Assembly: GCF_006345805.1 (NCBI RefSeq)
Contig: NC_043014.1
Coordinates: 32,364,001-32,428,000, forward strand
From: Octopus sinensis
Lineage: Eukaryota
Length of the DNA: 64,000 nucleotides
Direction of reading: 5' to 3'
This document shows positions 1 through 63,692 of this stretch, piece after piece. Under the pieces are notes generated by a model. That model ran no database searches. It was not told the origin of the DNA and was given only the letters and a program-made list of their open reading frames with translations. The position numbers and the translations under genes are program-made. How positions within the stretch are numbered: position 1 is the first letter of the stretch; every line of letters starts with the position of its first letter.

Positions 1-898
1 TGCTTTTTGCATGCTCCAGTCATTAGTGCTTTTTATGTGGGACCATCACCAGTATATTTTGCATGGTATTAACACCAGCACATTTTATGTAGCACCATCA
101 CTAGTACATTCTATGTGGAACCATCACCAGTACATTTTATGTGACACCTGCACCAGTGCTCTTTATATGGCACCATCACCAGTACTTTTTATGAAGAACC
201 ATCCCCAGTACTTTTTATGTGGCGCCATCACCTACTTTTTAAGTGGAAGCCACACCAGTATTTTTTATGTGGCTGCAGCACCAGTACTTTTTGAGGCAGC
301 AACACTAGCACATTTTGAGTGGCACCATCACCAGTACTTTTAATATGGCACCAACACCAGTGCTTTTTATGTGCAGCAGCAACAGAACATAGTATGTGGC
401 AGCAACACCAGTACATTTTGTGTGCCACCATTACCAGTACTTTTTATGTAGCACCATCACCAGTACTTTTTATGTGGCACCAGCATCAGTGATTTTTATG
501 TAACAGCAGCACCAGAAATTTTGTGGCACCATCACCAGTACTTTTTATGTGACACCGTCACTAATGTCCTTTATATGACACCATCACCAGTGGGACCATC
601 ATCAGTAATTTTTTTATGACATCATCACCAGTGCTTTTTATGTAGCACCATCACTAGTGCTTTTTTATGTGACACAATCACCAGTGCTTTTTTAGTAGCA
701 CCATCACTAGTGCTTTTATGTGACATCATCACCAGTGCTTTTTTATTTGACTCCATCACCAGTGCATTTTATGTGGCACCATCACCAGTGCATTTTATGT
801 GGCACCATCACTAATGCTTTTTATGTGGCACCATCACTAGTGCTTTTTATGTGGCACTATCACCAGTACTTTTTTGTGGCACCATCACTAGTGCTTTC
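1..898. repeat. 26-bp degenerate minisatellite (consensus ~GTGGCACCATCACCAGTGCTTTTTAT), ~34 copies, probably continuing upstream of the window
   Basis: CCAGT/CTAGT anchor recurs at 49, 75, 101, 127, 153, 179, 205 (period 26). ORFs 11-343 and 720-1109 are translations of this array. Confidence 0.95.
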
Positions 899-17149: not shown

Positions 17150-17501
17150 TATGTATGTATAAAACATGCAACCAGTGTTATGGATGGGGGAAGTTAGGCC
17201 ACATATTTTGTGGACACATTTTATCAAAAGCCACATTCATGGTTCACCAGCAGAGGTACAATTATAAAATATAATTCTATCTCAGTGCACAATGTTCTTA
17301 ATAATCAGGGATGGTCTTCCTCAGTGATGAGCAGACAGCCATTATATTCATATATATATATATATTTAAATTATAACTTAGGGTATCTACGAGATACTGC
17401 CATGCTGAAAATAGCAGCCAGGATTTAACTCTAAAACCACCTTCAGCTTCAAGGAGAGAAGACAAAAAGGCAAAATAAAACTAGTAAAAAATTACTGGAT
17501 A

Positions 17502-17560
17502 ATTCCAGATTCCGGATTTCTGGCTTTGCATTTAGAAATGCTTTGCCTCATCAGTGAAAT
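17502..17560 (-). ncRNA. Type I hammerhead ribozyme motif
   Basis: Minus strand reads ATTTCA / CTGATGA / GGC..GCATTT-CT-AAATGC..GCC / A / GAAA / TCCGGA (palindrome) / ATC site / TGGAAT. Stem I is 6 bp, with one extra A before GAAA. Confidence 0.65.
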
Positions 17561-17821
17561 ATACGCAGAGGGAAACATAAATACGTATTTATATACATAC
17601 AACATGCGAATACTTATACGAATGTATACATACATATATACATATGCACGTATGCAACACGACCAGTTTAAAATGCTCGCTTCTTAATTCCATGTGCGAT
17701 ATGGTTAAAACATCATCGCAGTAAATACAATGACGAAATAAATTTAAACTTATATAAGTAAGGATTAGATCGTTAATTTAAATTAAATAATTATCTTATC
17801 AAGTGGCCAGCATGGAAATGA

Positions 17822-17921
17822 AAACCTTCAAAGGTAATAATTATTATTAAAATGATAATGGCGGTATCTCATGGATACCCTAAGTTATAACTTTAATAAT
17901 AATTATTACCTTTGAAGGTTT
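17822..17921. repeat. 100-bp foldback with perfect 30-bp arms and a central hairpin
   Basis: AAACCTTCAAAGGTAATAATTATTATTAAA and its reverse complement, with GGTATC-TCATG-GATACC inside. Confidence 0.9.
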
Positions 17922-23923: not shown

Positions 23924-23961
<38 letters not shown>

Positions 23962-24133
23962 ATAAATATTAGGGAATGAATCCAAAATTACAGGGAAAGA
24001 TCAGATTTAGGGTTAAATCCAATTTTATAGTAAAATATTATATAATATAATTCGAGACAAAACCACTATTTTAAAACCAAACAAGGAAAGACTTAATCAA
24101 TACATAAAATTTTAATATAAATTAAATAAACCG

Positions 24134-24176
24134 CCACTACAAATGTTTCATGTCTGCTCCGACAATCTTCAGGTGG
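24134..24176 (-). ncRNA. Mirror copy of the minimal type I hammerhead
   Basis: Exact reverse complement of 24231-24273 within the palindrome. Confidence 0.75.
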
Positions 24177-24230
24177 ATTTTCGATCTTCTAATCAGTATC
24201 AAATTTGATACTGATTAGAAGATCGAAAAT

Positions 24231-24273
24231 CCACCTGAAGATTGTCGGAGCAGACATGAAACATTTGTAGTGG
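24231..24273 (+). ncRNA. Minimal type I hammerhead motif
   Basis: CCAC / CTGAAGA / T-TGTC-GGAGCA-GACA-T / GAAA / ACA-TT-TGT stem III / GTA site (24267-24269) / GTGG. Confidence 0.75.
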
Positions 24274-24382
24274 CGGTTTATTTAATTTATATTAAAATTT
24301 TATGTATTGATTAAGTCTTTCCTTGTTTGGTTTTAAAATAGTGGTTTTGTCTCGAATTATATTATATATATATATATATATA

Positions 24383-35778: not shown

Positions 35779-36800
35779 TTAACCCTTTAGCATTTAAACT
35801 GGCTACATCTGGCTGAAATATTCGACCTGTTTTAGGTTTAAACTGGCCAGCTCCAGCCTTTCATACCTGCTCCACAATATCATCCTGAAAATAAACAGTC
35901 ACATTATTGAAGTCACAAAAGTGTGAGATGATGCATTATTCATTCTAAATAGTGAAATTCCTCTGAGGCCGACTTTGCCTTTCATCCTTTCGGGGTCAAT
36001 TAATTAAGTACCAGTTGTGCACAGGGACCGATCTAATTGACTGACCTCCCCCACTTCCACAAAAATGCTGGGCCTTGTGCCTAGACTAGAAAAGAATTCT
36101 AAATAGTGAGTGGCTGTGTGGTAAGTAGCTTGCTTACCAACCACATGCTTCCGGGTTCAGTCCCACCCCGTGGCACCTTGGGCAAGTGTCTTCTACTATA
36201 GCCTCGGGCCGACCAAAGTCTTGTGAGTGGATTTGGTAGACAGAAACTGAAAGAAGCTCGTTGTATATATGTATATGTATAAATATGGGTGTATGTGCTT
36301 GTGTGTCTGTGTTTTTCCCTCCAACATCGCTTGACAACCAATGCTAGTGTGTTTACGTCTCTGTAAGTTAGCGGTTCGGCAAAAGAGACTGATAGAATAA
36401 GTACTAGTCTTCCAAAGAATAAGTCCTAGGCTTTGGTCGACCCGAGCTATAGTAGAAGGCACAAGTAAAAGAGTAAAAGAGTGAAGGTGCATGGCCTTGT
36501 GGTTAGGCTGTTGCACTCATAATCACTAGATCATAGTTTCAATTCCCTGACTGGGCACAGCGTTGTGTTTTTAAGCAAAAACACTTCATTCCATATTGCT
36601 CCAGTTTCTCTTCAATGAGTGGGGAATGTTGGCCTGTGGGGTGGCATCATTGAAGGTTAAAACAACACAAAAGTGCATTGTGACCAGCGATGTGTAATGG
36701 CATCTGATAGCCTGGTCAGTTATGTGATCATGTGAATTCTAAATAATCTGAAATAATTAGCTTTACATTTGACAGACTAATATGAATACTAAATGGTTAA
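35779..36800 (+). mobile_element. TTAA-flanked piggyBac-type MITE interrupted by three SINEs
   Basis: Starts TTAA-CCCTTTAG and ends CTAAATGG-TTAA. Nested Nin SINE at 35956-36095, CORE SINE at 36108-36482 and second-family SINE at 36487-36733. Confidence 0.65.
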
Positions 36801-37197
36801 GGTGATCTAAATTAAAACCTTCCTTTAAATTTCATGTTAATTTATGCTCCAAACATCAGCTTAATAATGACAAAGTTATCTTAATAAATTCTTGATAATT
36901 TCCCAAATTACCTGAAGCAAATGCAGTGTATTTTAATAAAAATATGTTAATGAAAAAGGTTAAATCAGTTATAGCAGGCCCAGGTATTCTTCCTGTTTTA
37001 TGTTCAGACTGGCCAGATCCGGCCTCTCACACCTACCTTACAGTGTTATTCTGAAAATAAACAACCATTTTATCGCTATTTCAAAGCTATATGATGATGC
37101 CTGGTTAATTTAAAAGAATGAGAATAGATAAGCAGTGCATTTGACAAAGTAATCTGAATGCTAAAGGAATAAATCTGGAAGAAAATAGATTGGCATA

Positions 37198-37607
37198 GGA
37201 GTGGCTGTGTGGTAAGTAGCTTGCTTACAAACCACATGGTTCTGGGTTCAGTCCCACTGCATGGCACCTTGGGTAAGTGTCTTCTACTATAGCCTCGGAT
37301 CGACCAAAGCCTTGTGAATTGATTTGGTAGGCGGAAACTGAAAGAAGCCCATCGTATATATGTATATATATGTGTCTGTGTCTGTGTGTGTGTGTGTGTG
37401 CATGTTTGTGTGTGTGTGCTTCTCCCCCCAACATCGCTTGACAACCGATGCTGTTGTGTTTATGTCACCGTAACTTAGCGGTTTGACAAAAGAGACTGAA
37501 AGAATAAGTGCTAGGCTTACAAAGAATAAGTCCTGGGGTCGATTTGCTCGACTAAAGGCGGTGCTCCAGCATGGCCACAGTCAAATCACTGAACAAGTAA
37601 AAGAGAG
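37198..37607 (+). mobile_element. CORE-type SINE, near consensus
   Basis: GGAGTGGCTGTGTGGTAAG head with B box GGTTCAGTCCC, plus full body. Confidence 0.9.
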
Positions 37608-46656: not shown

Positions 46657-47947
46657 CGAGGGGCGTTCAATAAGTAATGCCTCTGACCCACTTGCAGTTG
46701 TTTGATCTAGCTGAAATTTTGCATGTGCAATCATTTATATCTCTATAGATTAAGTGGCAAATTACAGCTCTGAACTAATTGTGGTTTTCGATTTACAGGT
46801 GTTTGAACTGAGTCAAGTGTGAAATGGAGCATGTTGAGTGTTGAGCAGTGATCCGGTTTTTGTATTTGAAAGGACGCACACCACAGGAGACTTTTGATGA
46901 ATTGAAAGTAACTTATGGTGATAATGCCCCATCATATGACCTTGTAAAATGCTGGCATCGTGAATTCAAACATGGTCGGAACTCTGTGGAAACAGCTCCC
47001 AGATCTGGTCGCCCCCATCTGCCATTGATGAGGCATCTGTCTGTCAAGTTGAGGCTGCCATTTTGGAAGATCGACGCATAACTATTCGCCAAATAGCCCA
47101 TGAGGTCAAGATTAGTACCGGGTCTGTGGAAACTATCATTCATGACCATTTGCATATGCAAAAGGTGTCTGCCAGATGGATTCCCAGGTTGCTCACACCT
47201 TTCCAGAAGCAAGAACTCGTTGATTGCTCGAGGATGAATTTGGAGATGTGCCAAGAAGATGAGTCAAAATTTTTCAAAAGACTGATTGCAGAGGATAAAA
47301 CCTGGGTCCATCACTATGATCCAGAGACCAAAGCCCATTCAATGCAGTGGAAGCACCGTGACTCACCTCCCCCAAAGAAGGCAAGGGCGCAGCCCTCCGC
47401 TGGCAAGGTCATGCTTATAGTCTTCTGGGACCAGGACGGAGTAGTGAAGACAGATTTCCTGGCAAAGAGTGCCACAATTACAGGAGTCTATTATGCTTCA
47501 CTTTTGAGGAAATTAAGAGAAGCTATCAAAATCAAGAAGCGGGGCAAGATCAGCAAAGGCATCGTCCTCCTGCAGGACAACGCTCCGATCCACAACTCGC
47601 GTGTCGCCAGATCAGAAGTACAGGTGTGCGGCTATGAACTCATCCCCCATCCCCCTACTCTCCTGACCTTGCACCCTCTGATTTTCACCTCTTCCCAGCC
47701 ATGAAGTTGTTTTTGAAAGGAAAGTGTTTCCCAGATGATGCAGCCTTGATTTCTGAAGTAGCATCGTGGTTGGAGGACCAAGCTGGGGTCTTCTACAAAA
47801 ACGGTCTTCAGAGCTGCATCAAACGATGGGAGAAATGCGTAACTCTGGGTGGTTCCTATGTAGAAAAAGACTAATAACTGTTCCAAGTTTCGTTGCTCTA
47901 CTGCTATGGGAAGTGGATCAGGGGCATTACTTATTGAACGCCCCTCG
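46657..47947 (+). mobile_element. Full-length mariner (DD34D) element, 1291 bp
   Basis: TA TSDs and 37-bp TIRs with 2 mismatches (CGAGGGGCGTTCAATAAGTAATGCC..). Confidence 0.95.
46824..47874 (+). pseudogene. Mariner transposase pseudogene
   Basis: WIPRLLT, EDKTWVHHYDPE, LLQDNAP and YSPDLAPSDFHLF motifs. Stop at codon 7 (46842) and two frameshifts (~47020, ~47655). Confidence 0.92.
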
Positions 47948-49098: not shown

Positions 49099-49496
49099 AA
49101 CTGTCAAACATTATTAAAGTAATAATTTGGTATTTTGGGAACATTTTAATATTACTGGAGAAAGTAATGTTTACATTTGATAATCTGTGTCTCTATTATT
49201 ATAACATTTTTTATTAACCAATGAGTGAGCTTCTATGTGGTTATAAAAGCTACTAGAAATAACAATCAAATTACCCTCAAATTACACATCTTGAAGAATG
49301 TAGAACAGGTTAGGCAGTATGGTTCCAAAGAGACTGTCCAAAAATACAAAAGCAGCATGGTCTTGGCTAGAATAATAACTGAATGAAGACTGTTGTATAT
49401 TGGTATGCATGTGTACATATATGCTTGTGTAGACGTGTGTGTGTATGCGTGTGCACATGTATATGTTTGTATATATATATGTATATATATATATAT

Positions 49497-49775
49497 AGGA
49501 GTGGCTGTGTGGTAAGAAACTTGCTTCCCAACCATATGGTTCTGGGTTCAGTCCTACTACATGGCACCTTAGGCAAGTGTCTTCTACTACAACCTCAGAC
49601 CAACCAAAGCCTTGGGAATGGATTTGGTAGATGGAAACTGAAAGAAGCCCATCATATAGGTGTGTGTGTGTGTATGTCTTGTCCCCCCCACCATCTCCTG
49701 ACAGCTAATGTTGGTGTGTTTACATCTCCATAACTTAGCAATTCAGCAAAAGAGACTGATAGAATTAGTACTAGG
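49497..49775 (+). mobile_element. CORE-type SINE (3'-truncated by a Helentron-like fragment at 49775-50055)
   Basis: Head and core present. Confidence 0.8.
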
Positions 49776-51052: not shown

Positions 51053-51113
51053 ATATTGTGAGATGTGAACTCACAACTTCTGGTTTACAAGACCAGTGCT
51101 CTAAACCACTAAG
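51053..51113 (-). pseudogene. tRNA-Thr(UGU)-like pseudogene
   Basis: Anticodon arm CTGGT-CTTGTAA-ACCAG and T arm GTGAG-TTCACAT-CTCAC pair perfectly, but the acceptor stem does not form. Confidence 0.7.
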
Positions 51114-51187
51114 TTTTTAAACCGTTGAGCATTATTAAAATAATAATGTGGTATTTCGTGTAAATTTTAACATTACTGAAGAAAATA

Positions 51188-51633
51188 GGTAGCAAGCTGG
51201 CAGAATCGTTAGCACGCCAGGCAAAATGCATAGCAGCATTTTGTCTGTTCTTATGTTCTGAGTTCAAATTCCACCAAGGTCAACTTTGCCTTTCATGCTT
51301 TCAGAGTCAATAAAATAAGTACCAAATGAACACTGGGGTTGATATAAACAGCTTACTCCCTCCCCCAAGTTTGCTGGCCTTCTGCCAAAATTTGAAGTTG
51401 ATATTACTGAAGAAAATAAGGTGGTGAGCTGGCAGAATTGTTAGGACACCAGACAAAATACTTAACAACATTTATTAATCTTCGTGCTCTGAGTTCAAAT
51501 TCTGCTGAGGCCGACTTTGCTTTTCATCCTTTTGGGGTTGATAAAATAAGTATCAGTTGAGCACTGGGGTCAATACTATCAACTTACCCCAAACCCTGGA
51601 ATTGCTGGCCTTGGGCCAAAATTTGAACCCAAT
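51188..51633 (+). mobile_element. Two tandem Nin-domain SINEs separated and flanked by a 16-bp direct repeat
   Basis: ATTACTGAAGAAAATA at 51172 and 51403, and ATTATTGGAGAAAATA at 51634. Confidence 0.85.
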
Positions 51634-52361
51634 ATTATTGGAGAAAATAGCATTTAGTAATTTATACCCTGTGTCCCTATTATAACATATTTACTAACCA
51701 AAGATAGAGCTTCTTTGTGATCATGAAAGCTACTAAAAAAATAACAGCCAAATTACCTTTAAATCACATCTCTCTTGAACAAAAACAACAACCGTGACAA
51801 CAACAGCAACAGCAGCAACTAGAACAACAGTCAGTAATTAGAGAAGGATTATAGTTGGATTAATTTATCCATCCACAATTCCTTCCCCAGACCAGTCCAG
51901 GGTGAAGGTCAGAGTTGACATAGAAATGATTTGAACTATGAATGTAAATAAGTGAAACTGAATATCTAATTTATTTATCTGTGTGTGTGTGTGTGTATGT
52001 ATACATGTGCACATATGCATGTGTGTATGTGCATGTGTGTGCATGCATGTGTATGTATCTTTGTTTCTCAATATACAGTGTGGGTCAAAAGTCATAAGTT
52101 CAATACAGTCCAGAATTATAAAATAAAATCAAGTAAAATAAACAAAATAAGGATGAATACCCACATACTTGTACATGTTGAACAAAATGAATAATAATAA
52201 TAATAGAATCAAAATTAAAAGAAGAGTGCCATTGTCATCCAGGCAATGATATTTTGACATCTTGTGTGTCTTCAACAGGTTCAAAAAATGGCACCCTTCT
52301 TTTAATTTTGACTCTATATCTTCTGGAGGAGTTACGTCAATCCTTTATATAATAATAATGA

Positions 52362-55139: not shown

Positions 55140-55570
55140 CATAAAGATGTTCTAAGAGAATCTGTGGAAAGGGTAGACCCAGGAAGACATGGAATGAAGT
55201 GGTGAGAAAAGATCTTTGGCTGTTGGGCCACACTGAAGAAATGACAAGGGAGTGGTGGCGATTTGCTGGACTTGAGAAGACACATCAAGTGAAGTAAAAT
55301 CATTGCTGTCCATACATACAGACTTACAGGTGTCGATGCTACATAAAATGCACTTGTGGCTGATGTTGCACGAATGCACCCATGCAAGTGGGACATAAAA
55401 TGCACCCAGCACACTCTGTAAAGTGGTTGGCATTAGGATGAGCATCCAACCATAGAAACCGTGCCAAAAAGAGACAATTTAGAGTCTGGACAGTTCCCTG
55501 GCTGGCCAGCTCCTATCAAACCATCTAACCCATGCCAACATGGAAAACAGATGTTAAACGATGATGATGA
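55140..55570 (+). mobile_element. RTE-type LINE 3' end: ORF2 terminus joined to the (GAT)n-tailed 3' UTR
   Basis: GKGRPRKTWNEVVRKDL...MTR...WRF followed directly by the tail family found across the window. Confidence 0.8.
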
Positions 55571-56102
55571 TAGGCATGGCTGTGTGGTAAGAAGCTTGCT
55601 TCCCAACCACATGGTTCCAGGTCCAGTCCCACTGCATGGCACCTTGGGCAAGAGTTTCCTACTATAGCCTCGGCCAACCAAAGCCTTGCATGTGGATTTG
55701 GTAGACGGAAACTGAAGAAGCTCATTGTATACATATATATATGTGTGTGTGTGTATATATATGTATGTATGTATATAATTATATTATATATATATATATA
55801 AAGAAATATTAAAATTACTAATCTCTCTAAAAGAGAACAGCGGCAGCGTTCCCCGGAAAAATAGTTATCGCCATACTAATATGGCATTCTTATAAAAATA
55901 AGAATAAAGCTTTATTCTTATTTTTATAAGAATGCCATATTAGTATGGCGATAACTATTATTTTCGGGAACGCTGCCGCTGTCTCTTTTAGAGAGACTTA
56001 GTAATTTTAATATTTCTATTATTGAAAACAAGTGGATGTATTCCACCGAAACTAGGTAAATAAAACCATCGAACAGAGATTGTCAAGAAGCGACACCTAC
56101 TG

Positions 56103-56159
56103 GCTGGCTACGTTGCATTGAAAAGGGGAATACCCCGAAACGCGTCTGTAGCTGCCGGT
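56103..56159 (+). ncRNA. Type I hammerhead motif with U3-A8 variant core (unit 1)
   Basis: GTTGCA / TTGAAAA (56118-56124) / GGGG-AATA-CCCC / GAAA / palindromic ACGCGT / GTC site (C17=56146) / TGTAGC. Stem I extends via GCTGGC:GCCGGT after an internal loop. Confidence 0.8.
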
Positions 56160-56458
56160 CAAGTGTGGAGCGACTGACCTCCCTTGTTCGAAGGTTATAT
56201 GGATACAGTTTGTGTATCAAATAGCTAACTTAAGGCGATGGCCTCATGGAGCTAATAAGCGGACAGCTTTATTCTTATTTTTATAAGAATGCCATATTAG
56301 TATGGCGATAACTATTATTTTCCGGGAACGCTGCCGCTGTTCTCTTTTAGAGAGACTTAGTAATTTTAATATTTCTATTATTGAAAACAGTGGATGTATT
56401 CCACCGAAACTAGGTAAATAAAACCATCGAACAGAGATTGTCAGAAGCGACACCTATG

Positions 56459-56516
56459 GCTGGCTACGCTGCATTGAAAAGGGGCAATACCCCGAAACGC
56501 GTCTGTAGTTGCCGGT
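56459..56516 (+). ncRNA. Type I hammerhead motif with U3-A8 variant core (unit 2)
   Basis: GCTGCA / TTGAAAA (56474-56480) / GGGG-CAATA-CCCC / GAAA / ACGCGT / GTC site (C17=56503) / TGTAGT. Confidence 0.8.
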
Positions 56517-57668
56517 CAAGTAGTGTGGAGCGACTGACCTCCCTTGTTCGAAGGTTATATGGATACAGTTTGTGTATCAAATAGCTAACTTAAGGCGATG
56601 CCTCATGGAGCTATAAGCGGACAGCTTTATTCTTATTTTTAAAGAATGCCATATTAGTATGGCGATAACTATTATTTATATATATATATATATAATATGT
56701 ATGTATGTATTTATTTTGTCCCCTAACCATCACTTGACAGCTGATGTTGGTGTGTTTACATTCCCATAACTTAGCAGTTTGGCAAAAGAGACTGACAGAA
56801 TAAATACTTGGTTTACAAAGAGTAAGTCCTGGGGTCAATTTGTTTGACTAAAGGCAATGCTCCAGCATGGCAACAGTCAAATGACTGAAACAACTAAAAG
56901 AATAAAAGAATATATACATATATATATATATAATATACATATACACACACACACTCACAGGATTCAAATTTGAGCTACCATTAGTTTTCTGCTGTGAAAA
57001 CATGATGGTTATTGAAGCTTGTGTTACCATGTGTTACCAAGCAATCTTTCAAACTTAAATATACAATATAGTTTGTGAAAGAAAGAAAAAACTTAAAGAA
57101 TGCTGGTCTTTAAAAAACAATAACAAAAACAACACTGGTCTTTGTGAAAAAAGGAGATGGATATGGAAAAGGAGAAAGGATGAAAGGAAGGTAAAAGAAA
57201 AAATGGAATGAAAAAAAGGAAAAAAGATGAAGAATTGCATCCCTTTGGTTCGTTTGGATCAGAATTAATATGGTTGGTATGAATTAACTCAACAGGGAGA
57301 AGGGCAAAGTTTGTGAGACTTCTTGCTTAATCCAGAGAGGGTGGTATTTTCCAGTCCAGTAAAAGAAATTTGTCCAGATGCCTAATTTTAATAAAAATTT
57401 CAGGTCTAGAATTTAGTAGGGCAATAGAGTTCTTAGATCTAAAGAGGATCATGTGTATGTGTGTGTGTGTGTACGTATGTATGTATGTATGTATGTATGT
57501 ATGTATGTATGTATGTATGTATGTATGTATGTATGAATGTGTGTATGTATGTGTGTATGTATGTGTGTATATATGTATGTACACAAGGTATACAGAGTTG
57601 TATTCAGTGATGCAGAGAAGGTACACAATGTAAATATATGACGACTACTACTACTACTGCTGCTGCTG

Positions 57669-63283: not shown

Positions 63284-63692
63284 ATTCTCTTATTCTTTTA
63301 TTCTTTACTTGTTTCAGTCATTTGACTGTGGACATGCTGGAGCACTGCCTTTAGTCGGACAAATCAACCCCAAGACTTATACTTTGTAAGCCTAGAACTT
63401 ACTTGATTGGTATCTTTTGCCGAACCACTAAGTTATGGAGATGTAAACACACCAGCATCGGTTGTCAAGCGATGTTAGGGGAACAAACACAAACACACAA
63501 ACATATACACACACATTCACATATATATATATATATGACAAGCTTCTTCCAGTTTCCATCTGCCAAATCCACTCACAAGGCTTTGGTCGGCCTCTGGCTA
63601 TAGTAGAAGACACTTGCCCAAGGTGCCATGCAGTGGGACTGAACCCGGAACCATGTGGCTGGTAAGCAAGCTACTTACCACGGACCCACTCC
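63284..63692 (-). mobile_element. CORE-type SINE
   Basis: Full body in reverse orientation. Confidence 0.88.

What the first reader, a model, noticed from the sequence alone, without database searches (positions are those of the whole stretch)
55802..56677. Young retrozyme-like tandem array with a non-canonical U3-A8 hammerhead; predicts a 357-nt circular RNA
Seen: about 2.15 tandem copies of a 357-358-bp unit, preceded by an inverted copy of its first 108 bp and dropped into the (TA)n of a SINE. Each full unit folds into a type I hammerhead whose core reads UUGAAAA instead of CUGANGA. Stem III is only the palindrome ACGCGU, and the GUC cleavage sites (56146, 56503) are 357 nt apart. The unit has further hairpins (GCCATA-TTAG-TATGGC; GATACA-GTTTG-TGTATC). 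Established: C3 and G8 form a tertiary pair in the active hammerhead and the U3-A8 swap is a tolerated compensatory change. Minimal palindromic-stem-III hammerheads of Penelope-like elements cleave as dimers. Non-LTR retrozymes are tandem hammerhead repeats of a few hundred bp that yield circular RNAs. Inference: this is an active or recently active cephalopod retrozyme family mobilised by a Penelope-type RT. I do not know whether it has been described. The two units differ mostly by single-base indels, which looks like unpolished long-read error, so true copy number and identity may be higher.
Basis: partly seen in the sequence, partly recalled or inferred. Interest (0 to 1): 0.92.

Follow-up and report, generated by a model that had tools for sequence, protein, structure and literature searches.

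The report
Hammerhead-ribozyme tandem retroelement inserted in a SINE
A 0.9-kb insert made of 2.15 copies of a 357-bp non-coding unit, each carrying a hammerhead self-cleaving RNA motif with a rare but already reported core variant, is a new member of the known "non-LTR retrozyme" class, and its insertion scars point to copying by a Penelope-like reverse transcriptase.

Summary
There are 2.15 tandem copies of a 357-bp unit (55910-56677), preceded head-to-head by an inverted copy of unit positions 1-113 (55798-55909). The insert sits in the internal (TA)n of a SINE whose two halves are adjacent in at least six other copies in the window.

The hammerhead is not a chance motif. A covariance model built only from four experimentally validated retrozyme hammerheads (coral, mussel, two axolotl) puts unit 2 first in the 64-kb window (33.3 bits, E 2.6e-7) and unit 1 third (E 1.4e-3). 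A relaxed descriptor finds only these two sites, and none in 300 shuffled windows. Rfam's own models miss both.

Every invariant core position is kept except C3-G8, which reads U3-A8. Helix III is one base pair plus a palindromic tetraloop, as in axolotl retrozymes that cleave as dimers.

- U3-A8 is already reported in about 1,300 Schistosoma Penelope-element hammerheads.
- Cleavage, a circular RNA and multi-copy family status are untested. No homologue could be retrieved.
- The partial tandem, inverted 5'-truncated copy and (TA)n target match the published Penelope-like insertion signature.
- The spacer-less junction suggests a linear multimeric template for this insertion, not a circle.

Verdict: new member of a known kind, moderate interest.

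The parts
55540..55730 (+). Left half of the host SINE, up to its internal microsatellite
   Evidence: this segment recurs at least 15 times in the window, usually followed within 11-62 bp by the right half.
55728..55800 (.). (TA/TG)n microsatellite of the SINE, left remnant of the target site
   Evidence: TRF period 2, 55728-55800; sequence.
55798..55909 (-). Inverted 5'-truncated copy: unit positions 1-113 read on the minus strand. Its outer end lies in the second CTATTAT motif of the unit.
   Evidence: 93.9% over 114 nt; I1 (73-nt arms, 95% complementary, 0 nt spacer).
55910..56266 (+). Tandem unit 1 (357 bp)
56267..56624 (+). Tandem unit 2 (358 bp). It differs from unit 1 by 2 substitutions and 11 indel positions.
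56625..56677 (+). Partial unit 3 (53 bp), ending in the first CTATTAT motif and joined to (TA)n
56101..56161 (+). Hammerhead 1 with extended helix I. Closing stem UGGCUGGC/GCCGGUCA. Internal loop UAC/U. Helix I 56112-56117/56147-56152. Core UUGAAAA 56118-56124. Helix II 56125-56136. GAA 56137-56139. A-CGCG-U 56140-56145. C17 56146.
   Evidence: R1 20.5 bits, E 1.4e-3, no non-standard pairs; for the closing stem.
56457..56518 (+). Hammerhead 2. R1 hit 56468-56509. U3 56474, A8 56479. Helix II GGGG-CAAUA-CCCC 56481-56493. C17 56503.
   Evidence: 33.3 bits, E 2.6e-7, best hit in the window.
56147..56503 (+). Predicted 357-nt monomer RNA between the two GUC sites
   Evidence: circular fold -118.1 kcal/mol against -82.0 +/- 5.8 for 200 dinucleotide shuffles (z -6.2), 63% of bases paired. 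Helix I, the closing stem and helix II are all present in the minimum-energy structure.
56678..56712 (.). (TA)n/(TATG)n, right remnant of the target microsatellite
56700..56905 (+). Right half of the host SINE

Best explanation
This is one fairly recent insertion of a short, non-coding, hammerhead-bearing retroelement of the non-LTR retrozyme type. It was integrated into a (TA)n tract by the reverse transcriptase and endonuclease of a Penelope-like element.

Shown:
- A 357-bp unit is present in 2.15 head-to-tail copies, plus an inverted 5'-truncated copy.
- It sits inside the internal microsatellite of a SINE.
- Each full unit has a complete type I hammerhead of the metazoan retrozyme architecture: 6-bp helix I extended by an internal loop and closing stem, 4-bp helix II with G10.1-C11.1, GAA, A15.1-U16.1 around a palindromic CGCG, and GUC.
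- The only departure from the consensus core is that the C3-G8 tertiary pair reads U3-A8.

Inferred mechanism:
1. A master array is transcribed into multimeric RNA.
2. Hammerheads of neighbouring units pair through ACGCGU to build a 6-bp helix III (a double hammerhead) and cut after C56146 and C56503, releasing 357-nt monomers. These fold into a highly paired structure and could be circularised by a cellular RNA ligase.
3. For this particular insertion, both nicked (TA)n strands primed cDNA synthesis on the two A/U-rich CUAUUAU motifs of the RNA.
4. Both cDNAs ended at the same template base, giving the spacer-less head-to-head junction. That fits a linear, uncleaved RNA of more than two units better than a circle.
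For: - A model trained only on validated retrozyme hammerheads (alignment A1 from Supplementary Table 2 of PMC7229834) ranks the two sites first and third in 128 kb of searched strand, with every modelled pair standard.
- The descriptor gives 2 hits against 0 in 300 shuffles.
- The only two substitutions between the units (56113 T/C, 56152 C/T) both lie in the 12 nt of helix I and both keep pairing: U.G becomes C-G, and G-C becomes G.U. The chance of both falling there is about (12/357)^2 = 0.001.
- Changing exactly positions 3 and 8, to a complementary pair, is what selection for an active core predicts. The same covariation is documented in Penelope-element hammerheads (PMC4209133).
- Unit length 357 bp, 41% G+C, no ORF above 69 aa and no protein homologue match the published retrozyme traits (PMC7229834). 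The mussel retrozyme is 350-390 bp, and its hammerhead ends GAAACGCGCGUC.
- Circular fold z = -6.2.
- The double hammerhead is favoured in cofolding: -56.9 kcal/mol against -52.4 for the two monomers.
- The partial tandem, the inverted 5'-truncated copy at the 5' end and the (TA)n target match the Penelope-like signature (PMC8557442).
- Both outer ends fall in the two CTATTAT motifs of the unit.
- Two other hammerhead-bearing insertions next to (TA)n, each with an inverted copy, lie in the same window.
Against: - Rfam's curated hammerhead models give no hit, even on 86-90-nt slices.
- R1 rests on four sequences and a shortened calibration, so its E-values are rough.
- Both units descend from one insertion, so conservation of U3-A8 is effectively a single observation.
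- No homologous copy from elsewhere could be examined, so family size, covariation and activity are unknown.
- Penelope-type minimal hammerheads cleave poorly in vitro (PMC4209133).
- No reverse-transcriptase ORF was found among the ten longest non-repetitive ORFs of the window. That test was limited.
- No target-site duplication can be read in (TA)n.
Confidence: 0.72

Rival explanations
1. It is the same kind of element, but catalytically dead. U3 and A8 are two decay mutations in a copy or lineage that no longer self-cleaves, and the array is a fossil that makes no monomer or circular RNA.
For: Rfam models fail to recognise it. The template of this very insertion seems to have been uncleaved at two hammerhead sites (junction at 55909|55910). 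Minimal one-bp helix III hammerheads are weak in vitro (PMC4209133).
Against: Two independent transitions landing on exactly the two partners of one tertiary pair, and restoring complementarity, is improbable for decay. By my estimate the chance is roughly 1 in several hundred for two hits in a 13-nt core. All other invariant positions are intact in both units. Both inter-unit substitutions preserve helix I. U3-A8 occurs in about 1,300 natural Penelope-element motifs.
Confidence: 0.2
2. It is not a free-standing retrozyme. It is the 5'-truncated terminal (pseudo-LTR) part of an autonomous Penelope-like element that inserted once, and its tandem copies arose afterwards at the DNA level by unequal crossing-over or replication slippage. 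This is the satellite-birth model discussed in bioRxiv 10.64898/2026.07.22.740005.
For: Most Penelope-like insertions are 5'-truncated and carry the hammerhead near the 3' end. Only 2.15 copies are present. No other copy occurs in the 64-kb window.
Against: The array begins and ends at unrelated unit phases, both next to target (TA)n. The inverted copy abuts the first unit exactly, so the multimer is bounded by the insertion junctions themselves. Partial tandems are a primary product of Penelope-type integration. No coding remnant is attached.
Confidence: 0.15
3. It is an ordinary minisatellite or DNA-level duplication, and the hammerhead-like motif is a coincidence.
For: No curated Rfam hit. 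Only one locus is available.
Against: R1 gives E 2.6e-7 and the top rank in the window. There were 0 descriptor hits in 300 shuffles. There is exactly one motif per unit. Architecture and unit size match validated retrozymes. The insertion anatomy is that of a retroelement.
Confidence: 0.03

Closest known systems
Non-LTR retrozymes of metazoans (Cervera and de la Pena 2020, PMC7229834), especially the Mytilus galloprovincialis Mg353 repeat and axolotl HHR_Amex1/Ax330
   Same: Head-to-tail repeats of a few hundred bp (mussel 350-390 bp, here 357). G+C below 45%. No coding capacity. One type I hammerhead per unit, with a 6-bp helix I and a 4-bp helix II. Helix III is A-U plus a palindromic tetraloop, as in Ax330 (ACAUGU, here ACGCGU). 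The mussel motif ends GAAACGCGCGUC, against GAAACGCGUC here. The monomer is predicted to be highly paired.
   Different: The core pair is U3-A8 instead of C3-G8. There is no sequence similarity outside the ribozyme. Only 2.15 units are seen at one locus. Expression, cleavage and circles are not shown here. An inverted 5' copy and a (TA)n target were not among the retrozyme traits in the passages of that paper I read.
Minimal hammerheads of Penelope-like elements, including the U3-A8 variant of Schistosoma mansoni Cercyon elements (Cervera and de la Pena 2014, PMC4209133)
   Same: The U3-A8 covariation in the catalytic core. Palindromic positions around helix III that imply action as dimers. 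Association with Penelope-type insertions.
   Different: Those motifs have a long helix II (7-8 bp), a short helix I (4-5 bp) and a bulged base after A9, and they mostly occur as single dispersed copies in pseudo-LTRs. The motif here has the 'canonical' metazoan 6-bp/4-bp architecture with a loop 1 and closing stem, and it sits in a short tandem unit.
Penelope-like element insertion architecture (Craig et al. 2021, PMC8557442)
   Same: 5' truncation, partial tandems, an inverted 5'-truncated copy immediately upstream, and a (TA)n microsatellite target.
   Different: There is no RT/GIY-YIG ORF, so the unit is non-autonomous. The (TA)n preference was described for Naiads, which lack canonical hammerheads and are reported as old remnants in cephalopods. 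Which clade supplied the enzyme is therefore open.
Classical hammerhead satellites (newt satellite 2, Schistosoma Sm-alpha, cave-cricket pDo500)
   Same: [quoted passage not shown] The newt motif needs a dimer. This comparison rests on my own knowledge and on the introduction of PMC7229834.
   Different: Those have the canonical CUGAUGA core and occur in large arrays. They are now regarded as retrozymes themselves.

Membership tests
Non-LTR retrozyme | Head-to-tail repeats with a monomer of about 150-450 bp | tested here: met
   Period 357, 2.2 copies.
Non-LTR retrozyme | A type I hammerhead in every repeat unit | tested here: met
   Both full units hit model R1, built from four validated retrozyme hammerheads (33.3 and 20.5 bits), and both pass the descriptor. 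Caveat: Rfam's curated models give no hit, and the core is U3-A8.
Non-LTR retrozyme | Low G+C (below 45-50%), no LTR/PBS/PPT, no coding capacity | tested here: met
   41% G+C. Longest ORF is 69 aa, with no homologue. No terminal direct repeats other than the units themselves.
Non-LTR retrozyme | Monomer RNA predicted to be highly self-paired | tested here: met
   Circular minimum free energy -118.1 kcal/mol, z -6.2 against shuffles. This is a prediction only.
Non-LTR retrozyme | Self-cleavage at the predicted site, and accumulation of linear and circular monomer RNA | not testable with these tools
   Needs in vitro transcription and RNA blots or RNA-seq.
Non-LTR retrozyme | Multi-copy, dispersed family in the genome | tested here: inconclusive
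   No second locus in the 64-kb window. No eukaryotic genome collection was available. Exact-ORF, protein, viral and metagenome searches were all empty.
Hammerhead ribozyme (catalytic core consensus) | C3 U4 G5 A6 N7 G8 A9 / G12 A13 A14 / A15.1-U16.1 / H17, with G10.1-C11.1 | tested here: inconclusive
   All positions are met except 3 and 8, which are U and A. They stay complementary, and this natural covariation is published. Activity of this core in this context is not measured.
Rfam Hammerhead families (such as RF00163) | Score at or above the family's gathering threshold | tested here: not met
   No hammerhead hit at gathering, nor at E up to 10 on 1.5 kb or on 86-90-nt slices.
Penelope-like-element-mediated insertion | Partial tandem, plus an inverted 5'-truncated copy adjacent at the 5' end, plus a microsatellite ((TA)n) target | tested here: met
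   compared with the description in PMC8557442.
Penelope-like-element-mediated insertion | A cognate RT/GIY-YIG element present in the genome | tested here: inconclusive
   Only the ten longest non-repetitive ORFs of the window were scanned. Just a mariner-type transposase fragment was found.

The most novel reading that the evidence does not exclude
U3-A8 is the fixed, functional core of a whole retrozyme family in this (reportedly cephalopod) genome. That family would be invisible to Rfam-based annotation, expressed as abundant self-cleaved or circular RNA of about 357 nt, and currently mobilised by a (TA)n-targeting Penelope-like element. This locus would then be the first insertion-level evidence (twin priming on an A/U motif, common 5' run-off) that retrozymes use Penelope-type integration.
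Probability: 0.3. Interest if true: 0.6.

Novelty: new member of a known kind. Interest (0 to 1): 0.42.

Why it matters
Retrozymes are proposed to be parasites of Penelope-like elements, mainly because their ribozymes resemble each other and the two co-occur in the same species. This locus adds a different kind of evidence. It is a clean, datable retrozyme insertion with an identifiable empty site, and it carries the peculiar Penelope scars: a partial tandem, an inverted 5' copy and a (TA)n target.

It also shows that a full-architecture retrozyme hammerhead can carry the U3-A8 core and escape Rfam. Ribozyme counts in such genomes may therefore be underestimates. The giant squid paper, for example, lists 235 Rfam Hammerhead_1 loci (PMC6962438).

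The spacer-less junction gives a testable clue about the template. It points to a linear multimer with a defined 5' end, not a circle.

Tried and rejected
- Rfam at gathering threshold on the whole window: only a tRNA-like hit at 51058-51115.
- Rfam at E up to 10 on 55500-57000: only spurious microRNA and sRNA matches to the long palindrome.
- Rfam on the two hammerhead slices alone: nothing relevant.
- Retrieval of homologous copies failed. Exact look-up of the 69-aa and 48-aa ORFs of the unit found nothing. The protein search with the 69-aa ORF found no candidate. Two viral-contig pattern scans and one metagenome scan with the hammerhead pattern were empty.
- Those collections are not expected to hold this eukaryote's DNA.
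- Organism identification through the mariner-like ORF failed, so 'cephalopod' stays unverified.
- One literature search failed on term length.
- A full six-frame Pfam scan of the window for a Penelope reverse transcriptase was prepared but reduced to the ten longest ORFs. It was tangential and costly.
- A second ribozyme on the minus strand was considered and rejected. Neither R1 nor Rfam hits the minus strand in the array.
- Sequencing error as the cause of the indels was considered and judged unlikely from internal controls.
Full report
**1. What is there**

The region was read directly. Tandem Repeats Finder reports one array at 55908-56677 with period 357, 2.2 copies, 96% matches and 2% indels. 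BLAST of the first unit against the window returns:
- unit 2, 56267-56624, at 96.4%;
- a 53-bp third copy, 56625-56677;
- an inverted copy, 55909-55798, covering unit positions 1-113 at 93.9%.

It finds nothing else in the 64 kb. The inverted and direct parts meet with no spacer at 55909|55910 (I1).

The flanks are the two halves of a SINE that occurs at least 15 times in the window. In at least six other copies the halves are 11-62 bp apart, separated only by a TA/TG microsatellite. Here they are 969 bp apart.

**2. Is the hammerhead real?**

In unit 1:

| Element | Sequence | Coordinates |
|---|---|---|
| Helix I, 5' strand | GUUGCA | 56112-56117 |
| Core | UUGAAAA | 56118-56124 |
| Helix II | GGGG-AAUA-CCCC | 56125-56136 |
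| G12-A14 | GAA | 56137-56139 |
| Helix III | A-CGCG-U | 56140-56145 |
| Cleavage-site base | C17 | 56146 |
| Helix I, 3' strand | UGUAGC | 56147-56152 |

Unit 2 has the same layout at 56468-56509, with C17 at 56503.

Rfam does not see the motif. There is no hit at gathering threshold, at E up to 10 on 1.5 kb, or on 86-90-nt slices. The strong microRNA-like hits are artefacts of the long palindrome.

I therefore made an independent test. From Supplementary Table 2 of Cervera and de la Pena 2020 (PMC7229834) I took the hammerheads of four retrozymes whose self-cleavage was shown experimentally: coral Amil224, mussel Mg353, and axolotl Ax353 and Ax330. I aligned them (A1) and built a covariance model with the three helices (R1). 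Searched over the whole window with filters off:
- unit 2 is the best hit (33.3 bits, E 2.6e-7);
- unit 1 is third (20.5 bits, E 1.4e-3);
- no modelled pair is non-standard in either.

The calibration was shortened, so these E-values are rough.

As a second test I wrote a relaxed descriptor: C3-G8 or U3-A8, G-U pairs allowed, variable loops, and a palindromic helix III. It finds only these two sites in the window and none in 300 dinucleotide-shuffled windows. The motif is not a coincidence.

**3. Architecture**

- Every invariant position is intact except the 3-8 pair: U4 G5 A6, A9, G10.1-C11.1, G12 A13 A14, A15.1-U16.1 and C17.
- Helix I has 6 bp, followed by an internal loop (UAC/U) and an 8-bp closing stem (UGGCUGGC/GCCGGUCA). 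Helix II has 4 bp.
- Helix III is one A-U pair around the palindrome CGCG. [quoted passage not shown] Ax330 reads ACAUGU, and the mussel motif ends GAAACGCGCGUC.
- Cofolding the two motifs gives a dimer with the intermolecular ACGCGU helix. The dimer is at -56.9 kcal/mol against -52.4 for the two monomers, and the ACGCGU duplex alone is -8.9.

**4. The unit as an RNA**

The 357-nt monomer between the two GUC sites has 41% G+C. Folded as a circle it reaches -118.1 kcal/mol, against -82.0 +/- 5.8 for 200 shuffles (z -6.2), and 63% of its bases are paired.

No ORF exceeds 69 aa, and that ORF has no relative in the protein collection.

**5. Differences between the units**

Units 1 and 2 differ by only two substitutions, plus 11 indel positions.

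Both substitutions lie in helix I, and both keep pairing:
- 56113 T/C is position 2.5: U.G becomes C-G.
- 56152 C/T is position 1.6: G-C becomes G.U.

Two hits in 12 of 357 nt has a chance of about 0.001. With only two events this is suggestive, not proof, of selection on the helix.

The indel excess is peculiar to this array. Three other tandem repeats in the window (periods 62, 84 and 184 bp) show 0% indels, and a 165-nt inverted repeat at 24039-24368 is 100% complementary. An error-prone polymerase step, or heterogeneous template units, is my inference. Raw reads would settle it.

**6. How it got there**

Craig et al. 2021 (PMC8557442) describe Penelope-like insertions as:
- highly 5'-truncated;
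- 'often organized into partial tandems';
- preferring (TA)n microsatellites as targets, in Naiads.

All of these features are present here.

Two further details follow from the sequence. First, the heptamer CTATTAT occurs twice per unit (55955, 56016, 56312, 56375, 56669). The right end of the array stops in the first occurrence, and the outer end of the inverted copy stops in the second. This fits two priming events from (TA)n 3' ends by A/T microhomology.

Second, the two oppositely oriented copies stop at the same template base with no spacer. The simplest reading is that both cDNAs ran off the 5' end of one linear RNA of more than two units. Its 5' end lies 236 nt upstream of the first GUC site. 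That RNA would have been uncleaved at two hammerheads, so this insertion does not need a circular template. This is inference.

**7. Context in the window**

R1 also detects three further hits at two places:
- 17502-17560 (minus strand), with a canonical CUGAUGA core (23.8 bits, E 1.6e-4).
- An inverted pair at 24136-24174 (minus) and 24233-24271 (plus), with a CUGAAGA core (E 0.026 each).

The inverted pair sits in the two arms of a perfect, spacer-less 330-bp palindrome, inserted in the (TA)n of another copy of the same SINE. The 17.5-kb motif ends next to (TA)n and has a 41-nt inverted copy of its 3' end upstream.

These elements are unrelated in sequence to the 357-bp unit. They show that hammerhead-bearing, Penelope-style insertion into (TA)n is recurrent in this genome.

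**8. Comparison with what is known**

- The class is known: non-LTR retrozymes, 150-450-bp tandem repeats with type I hammerheads, low G+C, and circular RNA products (PMC7229834).
- The dimer-dependent one-bp helix III is known.
- The U3-A8 covariation is known. Cervera and de la Pena 2014 found it in Schistosoma Cercyon elements and retrieved about 1,300 such motifs (PMC4209133).
- A 2026 preprint argues on phylogenetic grounds, in vertebrates, that retrozymes derive from Penelope pseudo-LTRs (10.64898/2026.07.22.740005). A term search of it found no analysis of insertion scars, and by its own account it did not examine non-vertebrates.
- I found no paper describing retrozymes in cephalopods. 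The giant squid genome paper lists 235 Rfam Hammerhead_1 loci (PMC6962438).

The finding is therefore a new member of a known kind, with two modest points of interest. One is a full-architecture retrozyme hammerhead with the U3-A8 core that escapes Rfam. The other is an unusually legible insertion that ties a retrozyme to Penelope-type integration.

**9. Limits**

- No homologue from elsewhere could be retrieved. Family size, conservation of U3-A8, covariation, expression, cleavage and circularisation are all untested.
- The organism was not identified by any tool.
- The tolerance of U3-A8 in kinetic studies rests on my memory of the literature and on the natural covariation cited above, not on a test here.

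Noticed in passing
window 23958-24368: A perfect, spacer-less palindrome: arms 24039-24203 and 24204-24368, 165 nt, 100% complementary. The left arm extends about 80 nt further. It is inserted in the internal (TA)n of another copy of the same SINE. Each arm carries a minimal hammerhead-like motif with a canonical CUGAAGA core (R1 16.2 bits, E 0.026). It looks like a very young 5'-truncated Penelope-type insertion with an inverted copy. It is unrelated in sequence to the 357-bp unit.
   Followed up: partly
window 17363-17898 (minus strand); motif 17502-17560: A hammerhead with a canonical core (AUUUCA|CUGAUGA|long helix II|GAAA|UCCGGA|AUC^UGGAAU; R1 23.8 bits, E 1.6e-4). It is preceded by a TG/TA microsatellite and ends next to (TA)n. 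A 41-nt inverted copy of its 3' end lies at 17858-17898. Rfam at gathering threshold does not report it.
   Followed up: partly
window 55540-55730 with 56700-56905, and at least 15 other sites (for example 36111-36430, 37195-37604, 49495-49775, 63298-63681): A very abundant bipartite SINE with an internal TA/TG microsatellite. That microsatellite served as the landing site for two hammerhead-bearing insertions in this window.
   Followed up: partly
window 46964-47701 (+): A mariner-type transposase fragment (Pfam PF01359 Transposase_1, E 7.7e-23) in a 246-aa open frame.
   Followed up: no
window 55910-56624: The ratio of indels to substitutions between the two units is 11:2, whereas three other tandem arrays in the window (periods 62, 84 and 184 bp) have 0% indels. 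The excess is specific to this element and unexplained. Candidates are reverse-transcriptase slippage, heterogeneous template units, or local assembly error.
   Followed up: partly
window 51058-51115 (-) and 51172-51649: The only Rfam gathering-level hit in the window is a tRNA-like segment (37.2 bits). It lies next to a 231-bp x 2.1 tandem of SINE-like sequence and is probably a tRNA-derived SINE head.
   Followed up: no
window 25-897: A 26-bp (78-bp higher-order) tandem array of about 34 copies at the window start (consensus AGTACTTTTTATGTGGCACCATCACC). It was not examined.
   Followed up: no
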